Made by a program: the position numbers and the translations under genes
Shown here: piece after piece, positions 3 through 47,412 of the stretch
How positions within the stretch are numbered: the stretch's first letter is position 1
Layout: every line of letters starts with the position of its first letter
Source: Mytilus californianus
Lineage: Eukaryota
Direction of reading: 5' to 3'
DNA: 64,000 nt
NCBI RefSeq assembly: GCF_021869535.1
Contig: NW_026262734.1
Span: 23,870,001-23,934,000 of the forward strand
The notes under the pieces: model-generated
The model's database searches: none
Seen by the model: only the letters and a program-made list of their open reading frames with translations
What the model was told of the DNA's origin: nothing

Positions 3-545
3 TGTCCTTTCCTCGATCTTGATATCTATATCATTAACGGGAAGCTTAATACAAAAATGTATGATAAAAGAGATGATTTTTCATTTCATATCGTTAATTA
101 TCCATTTTTAGATGGCGACGTTCCCTTGTCGCCATCTTATAGTGTTAATATATCTCAACTTGTACGATTCGCTCGTGTATGTAACAACGTATTAGATTTT
201 AGCGAGAGAAATTTATGTATTACTGAAAAATTATTACACCAGGGTTTTCGATATCATAAACTAGTCAAAACATTTACTAAATTTTATCATCGGTATAAGG
301 ACATCATTCGTAAATATAACTCAACATGCAGACATCTTATACGTTCGGGTATTTCACATCCAATCTTTTATGGTAATATTCTTTACAAAGCACAAAAATG
401 TCAGTATTCACCTCAAAAGCTAACAAAACCTTTAAACAGACTTATTAAGAAGGGATATAGTTACGATACTGTTGTCAGGTCATTAAAGATTGCATATTTT
501 GGCTTTAATATTGATTCACTTATAGGGTCTTTGCATCGGAATTAA
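3..545 (+). mobile_element. C-terminal part of a Penelope-like retroelement reverse transcriptase (RT motif E to thumb), probably Naiad clade; ORF runs off the left edge
   Basis: The frame is open from position 3: CPFLDLDIYIINGKLNTKMYDKRDDFSFHIVNYPFLDGDVP..SYSVNISQLVRFARVC. FLDL and YDKRDDF..S..Y..SQL.R.AR are PLE RT/thumb motifs. The ORF stops at 545 with no C-terminal GIY-YIG, as expected for the permuted N-terminal-EN (Naiad) clade. Confidence 0.8.
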
Positions 546-590: not shown

Positions 591-668
591 TCTTCTCATA
601 TATTTTATGATGGTATAATACTAAACCCCTAACAGGAGGGATTGTGCCTGATATTCATATGATGAAGA
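591..668 (+). promoter_or_regulatory. SECIS element (form II) in the 3' UTR of the PLE
   Basis: Core ATGAT 607-611 / TGAT 649-652. Helix II GGTATAAT 612-619 / ATTGTGCC 641-648 (8 bp). Unpaired AAA 623-625, 12 nt after ATGA. Apical mini-stem CCT/AGG. Helix I TCTTC-TCATAT 591-601 / ATATGA-T-GAAGA 657-668. Confidence 0.8.
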
Positions 669-858: not shown

Positions 859-950
859 GGCTAGAGGTATAGGGGGAGGGTTGAGATCTCAAAAAACATG
901 TTTAACCCCGCCGCATTTTTGCGCCTGTCCCAAGTCAGGAGCTTCTGGCC
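859..950 (+). ncRNA. Twister ribozyme-like fold, type-P5 circular permutation; predicted cleavage U903/A904
   Basis: P5 GGCTAGAGG 859-867 / CTTCTGGCC 942-950. P2 GGGG 872-875 / CCCC 906-909. GAGGG 876-880. TAA 903-905. GC 910-911. P3 CGCA 912-915 / TGCG 920-923. P4 CCTG 924-927 / CAGG 936-939. L4 TCCCAAGT. Conserved A940. This matches the recalled O. sativa twister core (UAA-P2-GC-P3-P4-UCCCAAGC-P4-A...P2-GAGGG). Confidence 0.75.
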
Positions 951-1949
951 TTTGTTAGTCTTGTATCATTTTTAATTTTAGTTTCTTGTGTATAATTTGG
1001 AGTTTAGTATGACGTCCATTATCACTGAACTAGTATACATATTTGTTTAGGGGCCAGCTGAAGGACGCCTCCGGGTGCGGGAGTTTCTCGCTGCATTGAA
1101 GACCCATTGGTGGCCTTCGGCTGTTGTCTGCTCTATGGTCGGGTTGTTGTCTCTTTGACACATTCCCCATTTCCATTCTCAATTTTATACATCTACAAAA
1201 TCTACACAGAATGGAAACTGTCAATATAGCCACGGTGCAATTTTGGTACCCTCATATGATTTGCTGTATCATCGAATAGTAATGAGGAATTAACGGTGTT
1301 ACTTGGTGTGTCTCAAATTCTCAATATAATAGCAAAATAATATAATATACAATATTCCAAATCAATGGGCCCATTAGGTGCACAATAAGACGACAAGCCA
1401 ACTTAACACAGCCATGCATGGAAATTTCAGACGAATCGGACAAATATAAATGTGTTTAAATACTTGTTCTTTCCACGAACAAACATCTTATGGAACCAAC
1501 TACCACCACCTGTGATAGGCGTCCCAAAATTGGATGCATTTAAGGTTGCAGCCAAGGGAATATGCTAAACTTCCACATAATTGTACAGGGTAAATACCGG
1601 TTTATTCTTTTAAAAATTTTGAGGCTCTGCTTGCGGATGTTACTAATTAAGTAACCTAATTTAAGTTAAAGTTGAAGTAGACTTCTACACAGTAATTGTC
1701 TCCGGCGTCTTCAATACAAGTTATGATCCGCATTTCTCCTAAAAGATAAAAATTGGTATATTTTGAGAAATTATATATCATGCTAAAGGACTATTAGGAA
1801 CACTCTAAATATTAGCGATTCGAATTATATTTGAGTTTTATATGTACTGTTTGTATACTACATGATGCTTTCCATTCTTTTGCTACCGCGTTTTATTGCG
1901 GTTACTGAAGTAAGATCAGGAAACAAACTATAGTTACTTATAGTTGATT

Positions 1950-29348: not shown

Positions 29349-32300
29349 TTAGCATGCTCCGTATTTAACAAAATGCAAGTTTCTGTGGGTGCATCTGTCT
29401 TTATCAAATTCACACCTGAAAATAACAATAAAGAATATGCTAGAAATATGAATAAAAAGTTTTATTAAAGTAACATTGATAATAGATATAAGGAGATGTG
29501 GTATGATTGCCAATGAGACAACTATCCACCAAAGTTCAAATTAAGTGGATGTAAGCAATTATAGGCAAGCGTACGGCCTTCAACAATGAGAAAAACCAAT
29601 ACCGCATAGTCGGCTATAAAAGGCCCCGATATGATAAAATATGAAACAATTCAATTGAGAAAACTAACGGAATAATTCATAACGAAACAATTTACGAAAA
29701 ACAAATATGACAGACATGAACCAACAAATACCACTTAACTCCAAGCTCCTGACTTGGGACAGGCACATAAAGAATGTGGCGGGGTTAAACATGTTTTTGA
29801 GCGCTCAACCCGCCCCTAACCTGTTTGTTACTGAAAGTACAGCGATAAAATTTAATGCTATCTAGATCCCGCATCTTTTTACATGCCCCGAACGGCAAAA
29901 TCTGGATATGCCACCGTGGATGTATCCAAATATTATCGAAGACTGTACGGTTGCCTATAATTGCTTACATCCACTTCATTTGAACTTTGGTGGATAGTTG
30001 TCTCATTGGCAATCATACCACATCTCCTTGTATCTATTATCAATGTTACTTTAATAAAACCTTTTATTCATACTTAAAACACTTTAACTTTCAAAAGTTG
30101 GAATGTGATTATATACCAATTAATGATAATTCATTTCACGATTTGAAAGATTGTCCTTTTTTTTACAATCGAATGAGAACTGTTGTTTATGTTAAAAGAA
30201 TGTTTTTCATCTTACAACTTTGCAAATGTAAATATTAATATAATTATGACGTACAAGTTTATGTATGTTGCCCTATTTGATGCACATATTAACTGGAATG
30301 ACCTTTCCGAAAGACAGTTATGGTGAAATAAATCCAGACAGAATATATCATAAGCCACTTGTAATCCATCTTGTGTGGGAACTAATGATGATGGTAGGTC
30401 AGTGATGGTTGAACTTCTTGTACATGGACCAGAGTGAACAGCATGCAGTCTTGGATTAGCACAACTTGCTATATTTAAGGCACACCTGAAAGTAAATCAG
30501 ATGAAAATGTTTTCAAAGTAAAGACACGAAGTTTATAAGCTTTGATATTTGCTGTAAACCACATGACCGTAGACACCCAAAGTTATTGTGTAGTGTTTTG
30601 CGGACGGTTGGTTTTTTTTGCCATGGTGATGAATAGTTTCATTCAATTTGTCTTTTTGGTTTCTTCTCCCTTTTTTGTTAATAGAAAATTGTAAAGTTAT
30701 TATATGTAATAAAAATAATAAATTGTAACTACAAGTAAAACATGAATGTTAAATAACGTAGCGAAATTGTACTTTATAAATCTTCAATCTGAAACATATG
30801 TATTGTAGTTAACATCTCATTGCTATATATATTGGATACCTACATATTGTAGTTTACTTCTTGTTACTATATTTAGTTGATTATATTCATATTTATATAT
30901 GCGTTTCCTTTAACATTGACGTCAATTATTAAAATCATTGTAATAAATTATTTTGCTCTCGGCCCTTGAATTGGAATAAAAATATCTTATCTTATCTTAT
31001 ATAAAAAAAAAAGTATTGAATACACACATATTGTAGTAAACTTCTCGTAACTATTGGATACATACATATTTAAGTAAACTTCTCGTAACTATTGGATACA
31101 TACATATTTAAGTAAACTTCTCGTAACAATTGGATAATTACATACATATTGTAGTTAACTTCTCGTAACTATTGGATACATACATATTGTAGTAAATTTC
31201 TCGTAACTATTGGATACATACATATTGTAGTAAATTTCTCGTAACTATTGGATACATACATATTGTAGTAAACTTCTCGTAACTATTGGATACATACATA
31301 TTGTAGTAAACTTCTCGTAACTATTAGATACATACATATTGTAGTTAACTTCTCGTAACTATTGGATACATACATATTGTAGTAAATTTCTCGTAACTAT
31401 TGGATACATACATATTTAAGTAAACTTCTCGTAACTATTGGATACATACATATTGTAGTAAACTTCTCGTAACTATTAGATACATACATATTGTAGTTAA
31501 CTTCTCGTAACTATTGGATACATACATATTGTAGTAAATTTCTCGTAACTATTGGATACATACATATTGTAGTAAATTTCTCGTAACTATTGGATACATA
31601 CATATTGTAGTAAATTTCTCGTAACTATTGGATTCATGCATATTGTAGTTAACTTAATTCTCGTAACTATTGGATACATAAATATTGTAGTAAATTTCTC
31701 GTAACTATTGGATACATACATATTGTAGTAAACTTCTCGTAACTATTGGATTCATACATATTGTAGTAAACTTATCTTAACTATATTGGATACCTACATA
31801 TTGTAGTATGTTTTGCCGTCTGATCCACATGCTTTGGCCTCATCACGTGCTCTGCAGTTTATTCTGTCTGTAAGCTCACAATAATACCTAGTCAAGGCTC
31901 TGGCATAACAAGGTGATGTAAAAACTGAGAAAAAACGATATCAATTGGACTGTGTTCGTCTATATATGATATTCATGCTTAGTGATGCGGGACACAGGCG
32001 CTATGGGCATGCATCTCCTTTTTTAGTATTTGTTTTGTAAACTTTTTAGTATTTCAACATATTTTCACTTACTTAATGTGTCCTTTAAAATAAAATTAGA
32101 AAACCTGTTGAACGAAATCTATATATTTAAGGAAACTTTGTACTTTTGTTGTGCGTTTTTTTTTGGTTGCATGGCTGGAAGGGTTAAAAAATCAAATTTG
32201 ATACAAACAATTGGTCTTACCATGACTTGATACAAACAAATGGTCTTACCATGACTTGATACAAACAATTGGTCTTACCATGACTTGATACAAAAATGGT

Positions 32301-44178: not shown

Positions 44179-45482
44179 TGTAATTACTATTTTATAGGAA
44201 TAGTAGAGTTGATGTCTATAATATATCGATTGAAGGTGCAGTAAAGAAAACATAACTCATGACAGTAATCTTTTTAAATTGGCGGGAAATTCGGTACACG
44301 GTCTTTGATTACTATTTTCTTTGATTCAAAATGTTTGATTCTATATTATCGTAAGGGTTTTCGATTGCTTCAATATATGCAAACAAATTTCGTCTTTATA
44401 TTGTTATGTTTTTGTTGGTTTGAGGTTTCAAAGATTTCATCAAAAAATAAATAAAAAATGAAGGAATATATTTTAGATAGATGGACAAAAAAAACTATTC
44501 GCCAATCAATGAATAATTATGCTTAGTGCAAATCTCCATTTGATTTACAAATAAATCTAGGTACCCAGACTTCATCAAATAAGAAATGTACAATTCATGT
44601 AAAAATTGTTCTTAAAAATTCGTTAATATTTTCGGCCAAATGAAATCAGGACAAGGGTTTATATACTCTATAAATCCTCGAGGAAAACGATAAAACTTTA
44701 ACTTGCATTTGAAGACGATGCAAGTGGAGTGGAATAGTTTTTGACAGAAATGAAAAGGAATAGCGGGTTCGATAGACCCAAATATGACCACTATTTCTAG
44801 ATAAAATTTCAAATCAGCATGTAAAGCCGTTTATCATAATCTATCATAGTTAAAACAAAAATAGATGTATAGAAAATAGGCCTTTTAGAGTTTCCGTACC
44901 CAGAGTCGGATTACGCCCCCTTTTAATTGGATTTTTTTTATCGCAAAAATTAATGGTTAAAAAAACATTTTTTTCAATGTTCAGCGTTTTTTTTTTACCA
45001 TATCTGCCATTCACGCACACCCTTTCTTCGAATCTTAAATATGCGTATCGACATTCTTTTTATAGCATTAAAACAATATTATCAAAGACGTTAATTTTAC
45101 ACCCAATTCAATGAAAATAAACCAATCTCCATCTGTTTTAGGACCGGAAACATATAGCACAGGAATCACAGATGCTTATAACAAATAACCTATCATTCAA
45201 CAAAACATTTATAAATATATTTAAGGTGGTATGGGTGTCTTCCGCCATCTTGGATTCTAAAATAGTAGAACACAACAGGTCTAGAATTTTAATTAGGTCA
45301 GCAAATTTCGATGTAGGAGTGCAACTAATAAAAAAAAAGTTTCCATTTAAATGTACAGAGTAATGTGATCCTAGGTTATCATCACTCATATTTTTACAAA
45401 AATAGAATATTTTTTCTTGATTTCCATTTTGTGAATCTTGGAGTATTAAGGGGAGGTAACTTAGAAAAAGTATACTTTGGCG

Positions 45483-45805
45483 CCCGCTTACATGTTTAAC
45501 CCCGCTACATTCTGTATTTGCCTGTCCCAAGTCAGGAGCCTGTATTTCAGTGGTTGTCGTGTGTTGCTGTATATCATATTTGTATCTCGTTCATCAAGTT
45601 GTTTTTAACATAAATCTGCTCGTTAGTTTTCTCGTTTGAATAGCTTTACATTTGTCATGTCGGGGCCTTTTATAGCTGAGTATGCAGTATCGTATAGTTT
45701 TTGCTCATTGTTGAAGGCCGTACGGTAACCTATAGTTATTAACGTCTATGTCATTTGGTCTCTGGTGGAGAATTGTCACATTGGCAATTAACCACATCTT
45801 TTTAG
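45483..45805 (+). mobile_element. 5'-truncated copy of the twister-headed non-autonomous element
   Basis: catgtt-TAA-CCCC-GC-tacattctgtatttg-CCTG-TCCCAAGT-CAGG-AG-cctg at 45491-45542. The GGGGGAGGG half is missing; the 3' tail is intact. Confidence 0.8.
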
Positions 45806-47412
45806 TTTAATACCTATAAATAGATCTTCAGAATTTTTCTATTTTTTTGTTATAGTTGGAAAAAACGTATAGTGACCCCATTTTTTTTCTGATATTCCAA
45901 AAGTATTTTATAAGGGCTATCTTTTTTATTTTCAAATTCTGTCAATTAGTTTACCCTTTGTCCCCATTATGATGCTTTTTTATCTATACAAAATGTGTAA
46001 TTTTTTCACAAGCTGTAAACAAAAGCTCGGAGACCTATCATTTTATTACATTTTTGAACATATAACAACTTGATAATTATATACTACATTTTGGCTTATT
46101 TTTTTATACTCTCATACCATCTTAAGAATTAAAATAATTTTAATCGTTTTCTTCAGAATTGTTTACTAATATTTAAGGTCGTACAGTGACAAGTGAAAGT
46201 TCACATCTTAGTTCTGTTTTTTATGGACAATCTTCACAATGACAACTCATCATCGTATTACCACAATTCTTGCTATATAAAAAAGTAAAAATAAAAACCC
46301 AACTTGAAAGTATCATGAATGGTAGAAGGGTCGGTTTGGTTCTAAATTATACTTTGGTCCCAAAAACATGGCGGATATACGACTTATTTCACAAAGACAA
46401 ACAACATTTTAAAAAAATATTACATAGGAAACTATAAAGACTGAGCAACACAAATTTAACCAAACAAGGGTGGGTGGGGTGGGGCTTGATTTCAGGTGCA
46501 TCCTGTTCCACATGTGACACCAGTCTTTTTACTCTGGTAAGTGAAATGCTTTAACCTGGGAACAGTATATCTATATATATATCAATTTATATGTTCCTGC
46601 TTTAACTTAACTGGAAGATTGTGCCGTATTATTGGAATAAAACTATCATTTTAAGATTAACTTTTTAATCGCTCTCAACATATGTTTTGCCTATTAACAT
46701 AATATTTCTGCTTGACAATACAAACCACAATTTTAAATCGACGGATCATAAATTTTCCCTTTAAGTAATCAGGGCTGTTATTTCTATACCAAAAATTAGT
46801 ACATGTAGATCACACAGTAAGTTGGTTATTAGATGAATTTATAATTGGTTATTGGATGAAGCATGAAAAAGTCACATGACAATAAAATGGATGTAGTGCG
46901 GCAGATTTTGAAATTTTTTTTCAAATATTCACCACTATAATCCGTAATGGCTTCGTATGCTGATTATTTATACGGACAGGATTTTTAACATTACCATTTG
47001 TCTGACATCGACACTTAAATTTCGGACTCATCAACAGAGGTAAAAAGACACAGGCACTTGTTTTATGTTTATATTCTTTATTATCATGATATAAATGGAT
47101 AGTAGACATTCCCAATCCCATGGATAGAAACACGCGCCTGTGTAAAAAGACGGTTATGGCCAACCATTTTTCCAAGGATTCTGTAAAAACATCCAAATCA
47201 GAAAAAAACTGCCCTGGACTCAAAATATGTAAAGCCTAAAGGGATAAGCTATAAACCCCTGGTCGTGTCTTGCGAACACCTTAATAATAGACTAAATATG
47301 AGATTGAATAACAAAACCTGTTTTTAATGCATAGTGATACATGAATATATAATGGACGACTTTCAAAATCGTGCACTTTTCTGTACATTTCCTATGTCAT
47401 GTATGTCACAAT

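What the first reader, a model, noticed from the sequence alone, without database searches (positions are those of the whole stretch)
859..950. Type-P5 twister ribozyme fold in the 3' region of a Naiad-type PLE
Seen: every twister core element in permuted order (P5, P2', GAGGG, UAA, P2, GC, P3, P4 with UCCCAAGU loop, conserved A, P5'). The copy at 29742-29823(-) covaries in P3 (CGCA/TGCG becomes CACAT/ATGTG) and P5 (GGCTAGAGG/CTTCTGGCC becomes CAGG/CTTG), while the core stays fixed. Established (recalled): canonical PLEs carry hammerheads in their pseudo-LTRs, whereas Naiads were reported to lack them. Inference: this lineage processes its RNA with a twister instead, which would fill that gap. 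I could not check whether this is already described.
Basis: partly seen in the sequence, partly recalled or inferred. Interest (0 to 1): 0.9.

Follow-up and report, generated by a model that had tools for sequence, protein, structure and literature searches.

The report
Twister-fold RNA in Naiad retroelement tails
The flagged 92 bases carry the full core of a twister self-cutting RNA, and this motif is a fixed, co-varying part of the tail of Naiad-type Penelope-like jumping genes, a group published as lacking a ribozyme; actual cutting has not been shown.

Summary
Window 859-950(+) has every twister core element in type-P5 order: P5, P2', GAGGG, UAA, P2, GC, P3, P4 with loop GUCCCAAGUC, A, P5'. 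It lies 314 nt after the stop codon of a 5'-truncated Naiad ORF and 238 nt before the element's sharp 3' end at 1188.

A full-length 4,020-bp copy elsewhere has an N-terminal GIY-YIG domain, a CxC motif, a DKA motif, an RT domain, four in-frame TGA codons and a SECIS. The core pattern occurs 17,460 times in this 1.65-Gb genome, against 9 for the control.

A variant with GAAGG plus loop GUCCUAAG occurs 7,562 times. The two mixed forms occur only 1,427 and 615 times, which is family-level covariation in pseudoknot T1.

A covariance model built from mussel copies finds the motif after Naiad-like ORFs in four other assemblies. Across these, 28 of 32 pairs, including T1 and T2, change on both sides.

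- **Non-canonical P1:** it is replaced by two segments that stay palindromic in every lineage. This suggests dimer action, as in Penelope hammerheads.
- **Rfam:** no Rfam twister model reaches its gathering score.
- **RNA-seq:** four runs show no pile-up of ends at U903/A904, so cleavage is unproven.
- **Literature:** no paper in the library links twisters to Naiads.
- **Earlier notes:** the scan had already noted this motif on at least 14 other pieces of this genome.

The parts
3..545 (+). C-terminal part of the RT ORF of a 5'-truncated Naiad-type Penelope-like element. The stop is TAA at 543-545.
   Evidence: tblastn of the RT piece from the full-length copy L047 gives 93% identity over residues 301-478. 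ORF list and translation. The copy's 5' end lies about 200 nt before the window start.
597..661 (+). SECIS-like element in the 3' UTR.
   Evidence: Rfam SECIS_1 scores 29.8 bits (gathering score 35), E=4e-4, with the AUGA...AAA...UGAU core. The full-length copy has four in-frame TGA codons and a TAA stop.
859..950 (+). Twister-fold motif in type-P5 order. G876 is the candidate catalytic guanine. The predicted scissile bond is U903/A904. T1 pairs 878-880 with 929-931; T2 pairs 910-911 with 934-935.
   Evidence: Sequence. Model R1: 65.3 bits. Covariation. Genome-wide counts.
881..903 (+). Two self-complementary segments in place of P1: UUGAGAUCUCAA (881-892) and AAACAUGUUU (894-903).
   Evidence: Both stay palindromic with different letters in nearly every lineage. 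The pairs in pal1 co-vary.
951..1188 (+). Remaining 3' tail of the element, up to its sharp 3' end.
   Evidence: Similarity to 29 other copies ends at window position ~1188, while the 5' ends vary. RNA reads run on from 1187-1189 into flanks with no consensus.
29482..29830 (-). 5'-truncated tail of a second Naiad family. Its motif lies at 29729-29830 and reads GCGGG instead of GAGGG.
   Evidence: 95.2 bits.
45457..45812 (+). 5'-truncated tail of a third Naiad family. Only the 3' half of the motif remains, from about 45476.
   Evidence: 56.4 bits.

Best explanation
The 92 bases are a twister-class ribozyme motif. It is circularly permuted so that the ends meet in P5. It is an inherited module of the 3' region of Naiad-type (N-terminal GIY-YIG) Penelope-like retroelements, lying about 240-290 nt before the unit's 3' end.

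**Inferred mechanism.**
- In the head-to-tail partial tandems these elements form, a transcript carries the motif upstream and downstream of a full unit.
- Cleavage at U903/A904 would give unit-length RNA with 5'-OH and 2',3'-cyclic phosphate ends. This is the role proposed for the hammerhead in other Penelope-like elements.
- The canonical P1 is replaced by two segments that are kept self-complementary. Two motifs therefore probably have to pair, as a dimer or in cis between tandem copies, for efficient cutting. That would keep the thousands of dispersed single copies inert.

**Shown:** the fold, its covariation, and its fixed place in Naiad tails.
**Inferred:** catalysis, dimer action, and the processing role.
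For: **1. Core.** Every conserved twister block is present. It matches the block table of canonical Schistosoma twisters in PMC8501958 except for one C-to-U change in L4. The positions kept in at least 95% of 25 distinct sequences are GA.G of L1, UUUAA, two Cs of P2 plus the L2 C, and GU..AAG.C of L4.

**2. Abundance.** The pattern GAGGG...UAA-N4-GC...GUCCCAAG occurs 17,460 times, against 9 for the reversed control.

**3. T1 pseudoknot.**
- GAGGG with GUCCCAAG: 17,460 copies.
- GAAGG with GUCCUAAG: 7,562 copies.
- Mixed forms: 1,427 and 615 copies.

**4. Cross-lineage covariation.**
- On A5 (26 distinct rows), 91.7% of cells are paired, against 68.5% in shuffles.
- 28 of 32 pairs change on both sides.
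- The covariation score is 0.589, against 0.201 for shuffles (0 of 500 reach it) and 0.06-0.08 for slid partners. A4 gives similar values.
- T1 and T2 were not in the model used to align. One T2 pair still shows GU 17, AU 3, CG 3 and UG 1.

**5. Context.**
- Three window copies and further families all sit between a Naiad RT ORF and a sharp 3' end.
- The full-length 4,020-bp unit, with an upstream partial tandem copy, carries the motif in both copies.
- Its ORF has YVGETGR...EH, CxC, DKAANN, FDFSTLY and RYLDD motifs.

**6. Other assemblies.** R1 hits at E 1e-6 to 1e-11 lie after Naiad-like ORFs with 48-54% RT identity in four other assemblies.

**7. Palindromes.**
- pal1 variants: GAGAUCUC, GAGCGCUC, GGGCGCCC, GGGAUCCC, UGGUACCA, AUGGCCAU, AGGUACCU, GGCUAGCC.
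- pal2 variants: AAACAUGUUU, AAACUAGUUU, AAACGUUU, AAACCGGUUU.
- Penelope hammerheads likewise have a palindromic stem-III loop and act as dimers (PMC6765202).
Against: - No Rfam twister model reaches its gathering score. There are partial P1 hits of 13-20 bits against 67.2. Twister-P5 was not reported on the region, and gave nothing among the 79 genome candidates scored. Nothing was found on the L077 version.
- No canonical P1 exists. The literature says cleavage without P1 is inefficient (PMC8501958).
- One T2 position is a G·U wobble in all mussel copies.
- One T1 position is U/U in two foreign lineages.
- Four raw RNA-seq runs cover the motif at 200-750x on both strands. None shows starts or ends at 903/904 at a fifth of local depth, and there is no dip in depth.
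- No motif was found in L076, nor in a 34%-identity Naiad-like element, though its flank is only 650-770 nt.
- Many counts come from copies related by descent, so the number of independent events is far below the number of copies.
Confidence: 0.7

Rival explanations
1. A conserved structured RNA that keeps the twister fold but no longer cuts. It would serve as a recognition, dimerisation or packaging signal for the Naiad RT at the 3' region, and the palindromes would act as an RNA dimer-linkage site.
For: - No cut-site signal in RNA-seq.
- P1 is missing.
- Two strictly kept palindromes.
- A fixed distance from the 3' end in all families.
Against: - The nucleotides kept invariant are those of the twister active site and pseudoknots: the scissile UA, GA.G, and AAG.C.
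- A mere binding scaffold would not need the scissile UAA or the candidate catalytic G.
- Dimer-dependent hammerheads in other Penelope-like elements also cut poorly in vitro.
Confidence: 0.2
2. The motif belongs to a different element, an RTE-type LINE or SINE with a 5' twister as in Schistosoma Perere-3, that merely lies next to Naiad copies.
For: - Twister variants at the 5' end of RTE elements are published (PMC8501958; PMC7761336).
- Window copies 2 and 3 at first looked like ~340-bp units that start at the motif.
Against: - Longer copies of those two families continue upstream into Naiad RT ORFs.
- 5' ends vary while the 3' end is fixed.
- In the tandem L047 the motif lies inside the 4,020-bp unit, 240 nt before its end.
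- The same arrangement holds in four other assemblies.
Confidence: 0.03
3. Chance resemblance within a high-copy repeat, with no RNA structure under selection.
For: Rfam thresholds are not met. Most mussel copies are 90-100% alike, so conservation alone says little.
Against: - Double-sided changes in 28 of 32 pairs across lineages, including pseudoknot pairs that were not used for the alignment.
- The 2x2 counts for T1.
Confidence: 0.02

Closest known systems
Twister ribozyme, type P5 (Rfam RF02684; Roth et al. 2014)
   Same: - The same order of elements.
- The same conserved L1 (UAA and GAGGG), L2 (GC) and L4 (GUCCCAAG.C).
- P2, P3, P4 and P5 helices and both pseudoknots, all with covariation.
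   Different: - No canonical P1. A hairpin-capable palindrome follows GAGGG, and a second palindrome separates it from the scissile U.
- L4 ends in U-C, which gives a G·U pair in T2.
- It scores below every Rfam twister threshold.
- Activity has not been tested.
Minimal type-I hammerheads in the pseudo-LTRs of canonical Penelope-like elements (Cervera and de la Peña 2014; Lünse et al. 2017)
   Same: - A self-cleaving-ribozyme motif within the terminal repeat region of a Penelope-like element that forms partial tandems.
- A shortened closing helix with palindromic letters, which points to action as a dimer.
- Very high copy number.
   Different: - A different ribozyme class.
- It is found in the Naiad clade, which was published as lacking canonical hammerheads (PMC8557442).
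[quoted passage not shown] 2021, PMC8501958)
   Same: A twister core tied to a retrotransposon. P1 is weak or absent. The letters after GAGGG (UUG...) are alike.
   Different: - Those are in type-P1 order, at the element's 5' end, with the cut defining the 5' terminus.
- This one is in P5 order, lies in the 3' region about 285 nt before the end, and belongs to a Penelope-like element.

Membership tests
Twister ribozyme class | L1 5' side UAA with the scissile U-A step | tested here: met
   UUUAA is kept in at least 95% of 25 distinct sequences from five assemblies. In the window it is U903/A904-A905.
Twister ribozyme class | L1 3' side GAGGG, including the catalytic guanine | tested here: met
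   G876-G880 in the window. G, A and the fourth G are kept in at least 95% of sequences. The variants GAAGG and GAGGU occur together with matching changes in L4.
Twister ribozyme class | P2 and P4 helices and the L4 loop GUCCCAAGC(C) | tested here: met
   P2 is 95.7% paired and P4 96.1% paired, with double-sided changes in two of four P2 pairs and all three P4 pairs. The L4 positions G, U, A, A, G and C are invariant. One C is U throughout.
Twister ribozyme class | Pseudoknots T1 (L1-L4) and T2 (L2-L4) | tested here: met
   - T1: counts of 17,460 and 7,562 for the matched forms against 1,427 and 615 for the mixed forms.
- T2: one pair shows GU 17, AU 3, CG 3, UG 1.
- One T1 pair is unpaired in 10 of 26 rows.
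Twister ribozyme class | P1 helix of at least 2 bp flanking the cleavage site | tested here: not met
   The letters after GAGGG are not complementary to those before UAA in any lineage. Two palindromes stand there instead.
Twister ribozyme class | Score at or above the Rfam gathering threshold (RF02684, RF03160) | tested here: not met
Twister ribozyme class | Site-specific self-cleavage | tested here: inconclusive
   RNA-seq shows no pile-up of ends at 903/904. These libraries mostly sample read-through of dispersed copies on both strands. An in vitro assay is not possible with these tools.
Naiad clade of Penelope-like elements (Craig et al. 2021) | GIY-YIG endonuclease N-terminal to the RT, in one ORF | tested here: met
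   L047 ORF: IIY...YVGETGR...EH...LN lies upstream of FDFSTLY, IPMGTNCAP and RYLDD. Pfam itself gave no hit, so this rests on motifs and on homology to Naiad-like proteins.
Naiad clade of Penelope-like elements (Craig et al. 2021) | CxC linker motif, and DKG changed to DKA | tested here: met
   TSCNCS and PADKAANN in L047. DKAANN is also present in L072 and L077.
Naiad clade of Penelope-like elements (Craig et al. 2021) | Partial tandems (pseudo-LTRs), frequent 5' truncation, and AT-rich or microsatellite targets | tested here: met
   - A truncated copy followed by a full copy in L047, and arrays with a 4,020-bp period.
- Variable 5' ends with a fixed 3' end.
- AT-rich flanks without a consensus.
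Naiad clade of Penelope-like elements (Craig et al. 2021) | Insertion-in-fingers domain between RT motifs A and B; placement in the Naiad clade on a tree | not tested
   No tree with reference Naiad, Chlamys and canonical Penelope-like sequences was built.

The most novel reading that the evidence does not exclude
Naiad elements use a twister that works only when two copies pair through the two palindromes that replace P1. This would be the first dimer-gated twister, convergent with the dimeric hammerheads of other Penelope-like elements. It would mean that the replication of Penelope-like elements in general needs a self-cleaving ribozyme that fires only on tandem or concentrated element RNA, whatever its class.
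Probability: 0.4. Interest if true: 0.85.

Novelty: new variant of a known kind. Interest (0 to 1): 0.8.

Why it matters
Craig et al. 2021 took the absence of hammerheads from Naiads to mean that a ribozyme may be dispensable for Penelope-like elements, or merely parasitic on them. Naiads are the most abundant retroelements in many marine invertebrates. If they carry a twister at the equivalent place, the opposite follows: the whole class keeps some self-cleaving RNA.

Swapping one ribozyme class for another, with the same dimer-prone design, would be a natural experiment on what the ribozyme is for. It would also add tens of thousands of animal twisters that current Rfam models miss, and a possible first case of a twister that needs to dimerise.

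The open question becomes directly testable with a 100-nt transcript.

Tried and rejected
- **Rfam on the window, at gathering threshold:** nothing.
- **Rfam Twister-P5 over the whole genome:** nothing among the 79 of 35,978 candidates that were scored, so this is uninformative.
- **Rfam on the foreign version L077:** no twister hit.
- **Pfam on both ORF pieces:** no RVT or GIY-YIG hit.
- **Window copies 2 and 3 as SINE-like units starting at the motif:** rejected once longer family members showed Naiad RT ORFs upstream.
- **A CUGAUGAG string upstream of the motif in two families, as a possible hammerhead:** no Rfam hammerhead hit.
- **MAFFT alignments A1 and A2:** they put P5 and long P3 stems out of register. 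They were replaced by model-based alignments A4 and A5.
- **Naming the foreign assemblies:** cluster look-up gave no names or accessions, so their taxa are unknown.
- **RNA-seq for a cut-site signal:** none found.
- **Nested-only folding:** it predicts P5, P3 and P4, but pairs GGGUUGAG with UUUAACCC instead of forming P2. The z-score is only -2.1. The homodimer minimum free energy is 8.4 kcal/mol below that of two monomers, which is suggestive only.

Full report
**What is at the coordinates.**
Window 859-950(+) reads, in order:
- P5 5' strand GGCUAGAGG.
- UAUA.
- P2' GGGG.
- GAGGG.
- UUGAGAUCUCAA, then A, then AAACAUGUUU. The last U of that segment is U903.
- A904-A905.
- P2 CCCC.
- GC.
- P3 CGCA-UUUU-UGCG.
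- P4 CCU/AGG closing the loop GUCCCAAGUC.
- AG.
- P5 3' strand CUUCUGGCC.

Block by block this matches the published table of canonical twisters, P1|UAA|P2|GC|P3|P4|GUCCCAAGC|P4|GUAAA|P2|GAGGG|P1 (PMC8501958), but permuted so that the ends meet in P5. There are two differences. L4 has U where canonical twisters have C, which makes one T2 pair G·U. And there is no canonical P1.

Rfam does not recognise the motif. Nothing reaches a gathering score. There are only partial twister-P1 hits of 13.3 and 19.8 bits, against a gathering score of 67.2.

**What element it belongs to.**
The window starts inside a 5'-truncated retroelement. An RT ORF tail runs from 3 to 545. A SECIS-like element lies at 597-661 (SECIS_1, 29.8 bits, E=4e-4). 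The motif is at 859-950. The element ends sharply at about 1188; 29 other copies share that 3' end, while their 5' ends vary.

A full-length unit, L047:5021-9040, is 4,020 bp long and is preceded by a partial tandem copy. It carries the motif in both copies, 240 nt before each unit's end. Its ORF has these features:
- a CX5-x-xxC finger;
- IIY...YVGETGR...EH (GIY-YIG);
- CxC (TSCNCS);
- DKAANN;
- FDFSTLY, IPMGTNCAP and RYLDD;
- four in-frame TGA codons at cysteine positions, and a TAA stop.

These are the diagnostic features of Naiads, including the selenoprotein-coding kind, as described by Craig et al. 2021 (PMC8557442). That paper states that Naiads lack canonical hammerheads and never mentions twister.

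The RT has at least 76,342 first-look matches in this 1.65-Gb genome. More than 100 copies have an intact 480-residue frame, and there are arrays with a 4,020-bp period.

**The other two window copies.**
The copies at 29729-29830(-) and 45457-45555(+) at first looked like ~340-bp units that begin at the motif. Longer members of their families continue upstream into Naiad RT ORFs, with 40-73% identity to the first family. So they are truncated tails of two further Naiad families.

The first of these reads GCGGG instead of GAGGG. The second lacks the whole 5' half.

**More than chance: genome-wide counts.**
| Pattern | Copies | Control |
|---|---|---|
| GAGGG-N12-32-UAA-N4-GC-N8-30-GUCCCAAG | 17,460 | 9 |
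| GAAGG with GUCCUAAG | 7,562 | 6 |
| GAAGG with GUCCCAAG | 1,427 | 6 |
| GAGGG with GUCCUAAG | 615 | 1 |

Many of the 1,427 are really GGGAAGGG register shifts.

The two changed letters are the partners of one T1 pseudoknot pair, G-C becoming A-U. The GAAGG families also change the P2 pair next to the active site (C-G to A-U) and the closing pair of P3 (C-G to U-A).

**Other genomes.**
The RT piece has thousands of homologues. I built a covariance model, R1, from 20 mussel sequences, using only the nested helices. Searching DNA around RT homologues of 48-54% identity gave these hits:

| Assembly | Loci | Score or E-value |
|---|---|---|
| ERZ26168041 | L077, L079 | 46 bits, E ~1e-10 |
| ERZ25069870 | L072, L074 | 42 bits |
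| ERZ25073293 | L073, L078, L080 | 35-40 bits |
| GCA_002832875.1 / SRR3928944 | L082, L083 | 29 bits |
| ERZ26168041, ERZ25073293 | L075, L081 | weak: 17.1 and 18 bits (decayed or partial copies) |
| ERZ25074796 | L076 | none |

Most hits lie a few hundred nt after the ORF stop called for that locus. The L077 hit overlaps the end of its called gene, and L072 and L074 each carry extra copies further downstream.

In L072 the motif recurs 4,574 bp upstream, which is a tandem arrangement. L072 and L077 have the N-terminal endonuclease followed by the RT. The taxa of these assemblies could not be named.

A 34%-identity Naiad-like ORF on a TARA scaffold showed nothing in 650-770 nt of 3' flank. The association is therefore shown for one sub-clade, not for all Naiads.

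**Covariation.**
On the model-based alignment A5 (26 distinct rows from five assemblies), I counted the nested helices plus T1, T2 and the inner pal1 pairs:
- 91.7% of cells are paired, against 68.5% in shuffles.
- 28 of 32 pairs change on both sides.
- The covariation score is 0.589, against 0.201 in shuffles (0 of 500 reach it) and 0.06-0.08 when partners are slid.

A4 gives the same picture.

The alignment was fitted to the nested helices, so it leans towards them. T1 and T2 were not in the model, yet one T2 pair shows GU 17, AU 3, CG 3 and UG 1, and one T1 pair shows GC 20 and AU 4.

P3 and P4 are rebuilt from entirely different letters in the foreign lineages. For example, P4 is CCU/AGG, AUC/GAU or ACC/GGU.

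The positions kept in at least 95% of sequences are GA.G, UUUAA, two Cs of P2 plus the L2 C, and GU..AAG.C. These are the twister active-site and pseudoknot letters.

A caveat: rows are related by descent, so the number of independent events is much smaller than the number of cells. One T1 pair is U/U in two lineages.

**The P1 region.**
In no lineage are the letters after GAGGG complementary to those before UAA. Two segments stand there instead. Both are self-complementary in almost every lineage, although their letters differ.

- pal1: GAGAUCUC, GAGCGCUC, GGGCGCCC, GGGAUCCC, UGGCGCCA, UGGUACCA, AUGGCCAU, AGGUACCU, AGGAUCCU, GGCUAGCC.
- pal2: AAACAUGUUU, AAACUAGUUU, AAACGUUU, AAACCGGUUU.

The outer pairs could form small hairpins. 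But the central four letters, which would be the loop, are also always palindromic: GAUC, GCGC, GUAC, GGCC, CUAG; and CAUG, CUAG, CCGG. A hairpin does not require this. Pairing between two copies does.

This is the design described for Penelope hammerheads: a very short stem III, a palindromic loop, and activity as dimers (PMC6765202; PMC7229834). Co-folding puts the homodimer 8.4 kcal/mol below two monomers, which is suggestive only.

**Does it cut?**
This is not shown. Four raw RNA-seq runs of a species that holds the element cover the motif at about 200-750x, equally on both strands. There is no dip in depth. No position at 903/904 has molecule starts or ends reaching a fifth of the local depth.

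Reads run past 1188 into unrelated AT-rich flanks. So these libraries mainly sample read-through of dispersed, mostly truncated copies.

This argues against efficient cleavage of single copies. It is what a dimer-gated ribozyme would give, but it is equally what an inactive fold would give.

**Literature and earlier notes.**
Published links between twisters and retroelements concern the 5' end of RTE/Perere-3 elements (PMC8501958; PMC7761336). No paper in the library joins twister with Naiad, and none that mentions both twister and Penelope-like elements describes such a motif. Subscription journals are not covered.

The scan itself had already noted the same motif on at least 14 other pieces of this genome, with the same reading, including the palindromes and the SECIS. 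I re-derived these points independently here.

**Verdict.**
This is a real, selected, twister-fold RNA that is a standard part of Naiad tails in a sub-clade of these elements. It is very probably a ribozyme, possibly dimer-dependent. Catalysis and its role in RNA processing remain to be shown.

Noticed in passing
L047:5386-8397 (G000:C165); window 597-661: The full-length Naiad ORF has four in-frame TGA codons (L047 5551, 5644, 5677, 6952), all at conserved cysteine positions, and ends in TAA. A SECIS-like element follows the stop. So this is a multi-selenocysteine Naiad of the kind reported for clams and spiders. The last of these sites is TGT in L072 and TGA in L077.
   Followed up: partly
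G000:C13:18889667-18898720; C165:87239069-87244102; C106:1000751-1005784: Head-to-tail arrays of the element with an exact 4,020-bp period.
   Followed up: partly
window 1125-1188: RNA-seq depth rises 4-5 fold over the last ~60 nt of the tail. Loose read ends at 1132 and 1136 show another upstream consensus. The extreme 3' end is therefore shared by more families than the rest of the tail.
   Followed up: no
window about 29930-30075: An inverted, truncated piece of the same tail lies about 110 nt upstream of window copy 2. This is the inverted-repeat arrangement described for Penelope-like insertions.
   Followed up: no
L064:1405-1440 and L056 (same place in the tail): A CUGAUGAG string, the first half of a hammerhead core, lies about 60 nt upstream of the twister motif in two families. 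Rfam finds no hammerhead there.
   Followed up: partly
L033:5595-7433: A 612-residue ORF with an nSTAND3 NTPase domain and ankyrin repeats lies near one Naiad copy. It is unrelated to the finding.
   Followed up: no
window (whole): The window holds 278 N letters.
   Followed up: no
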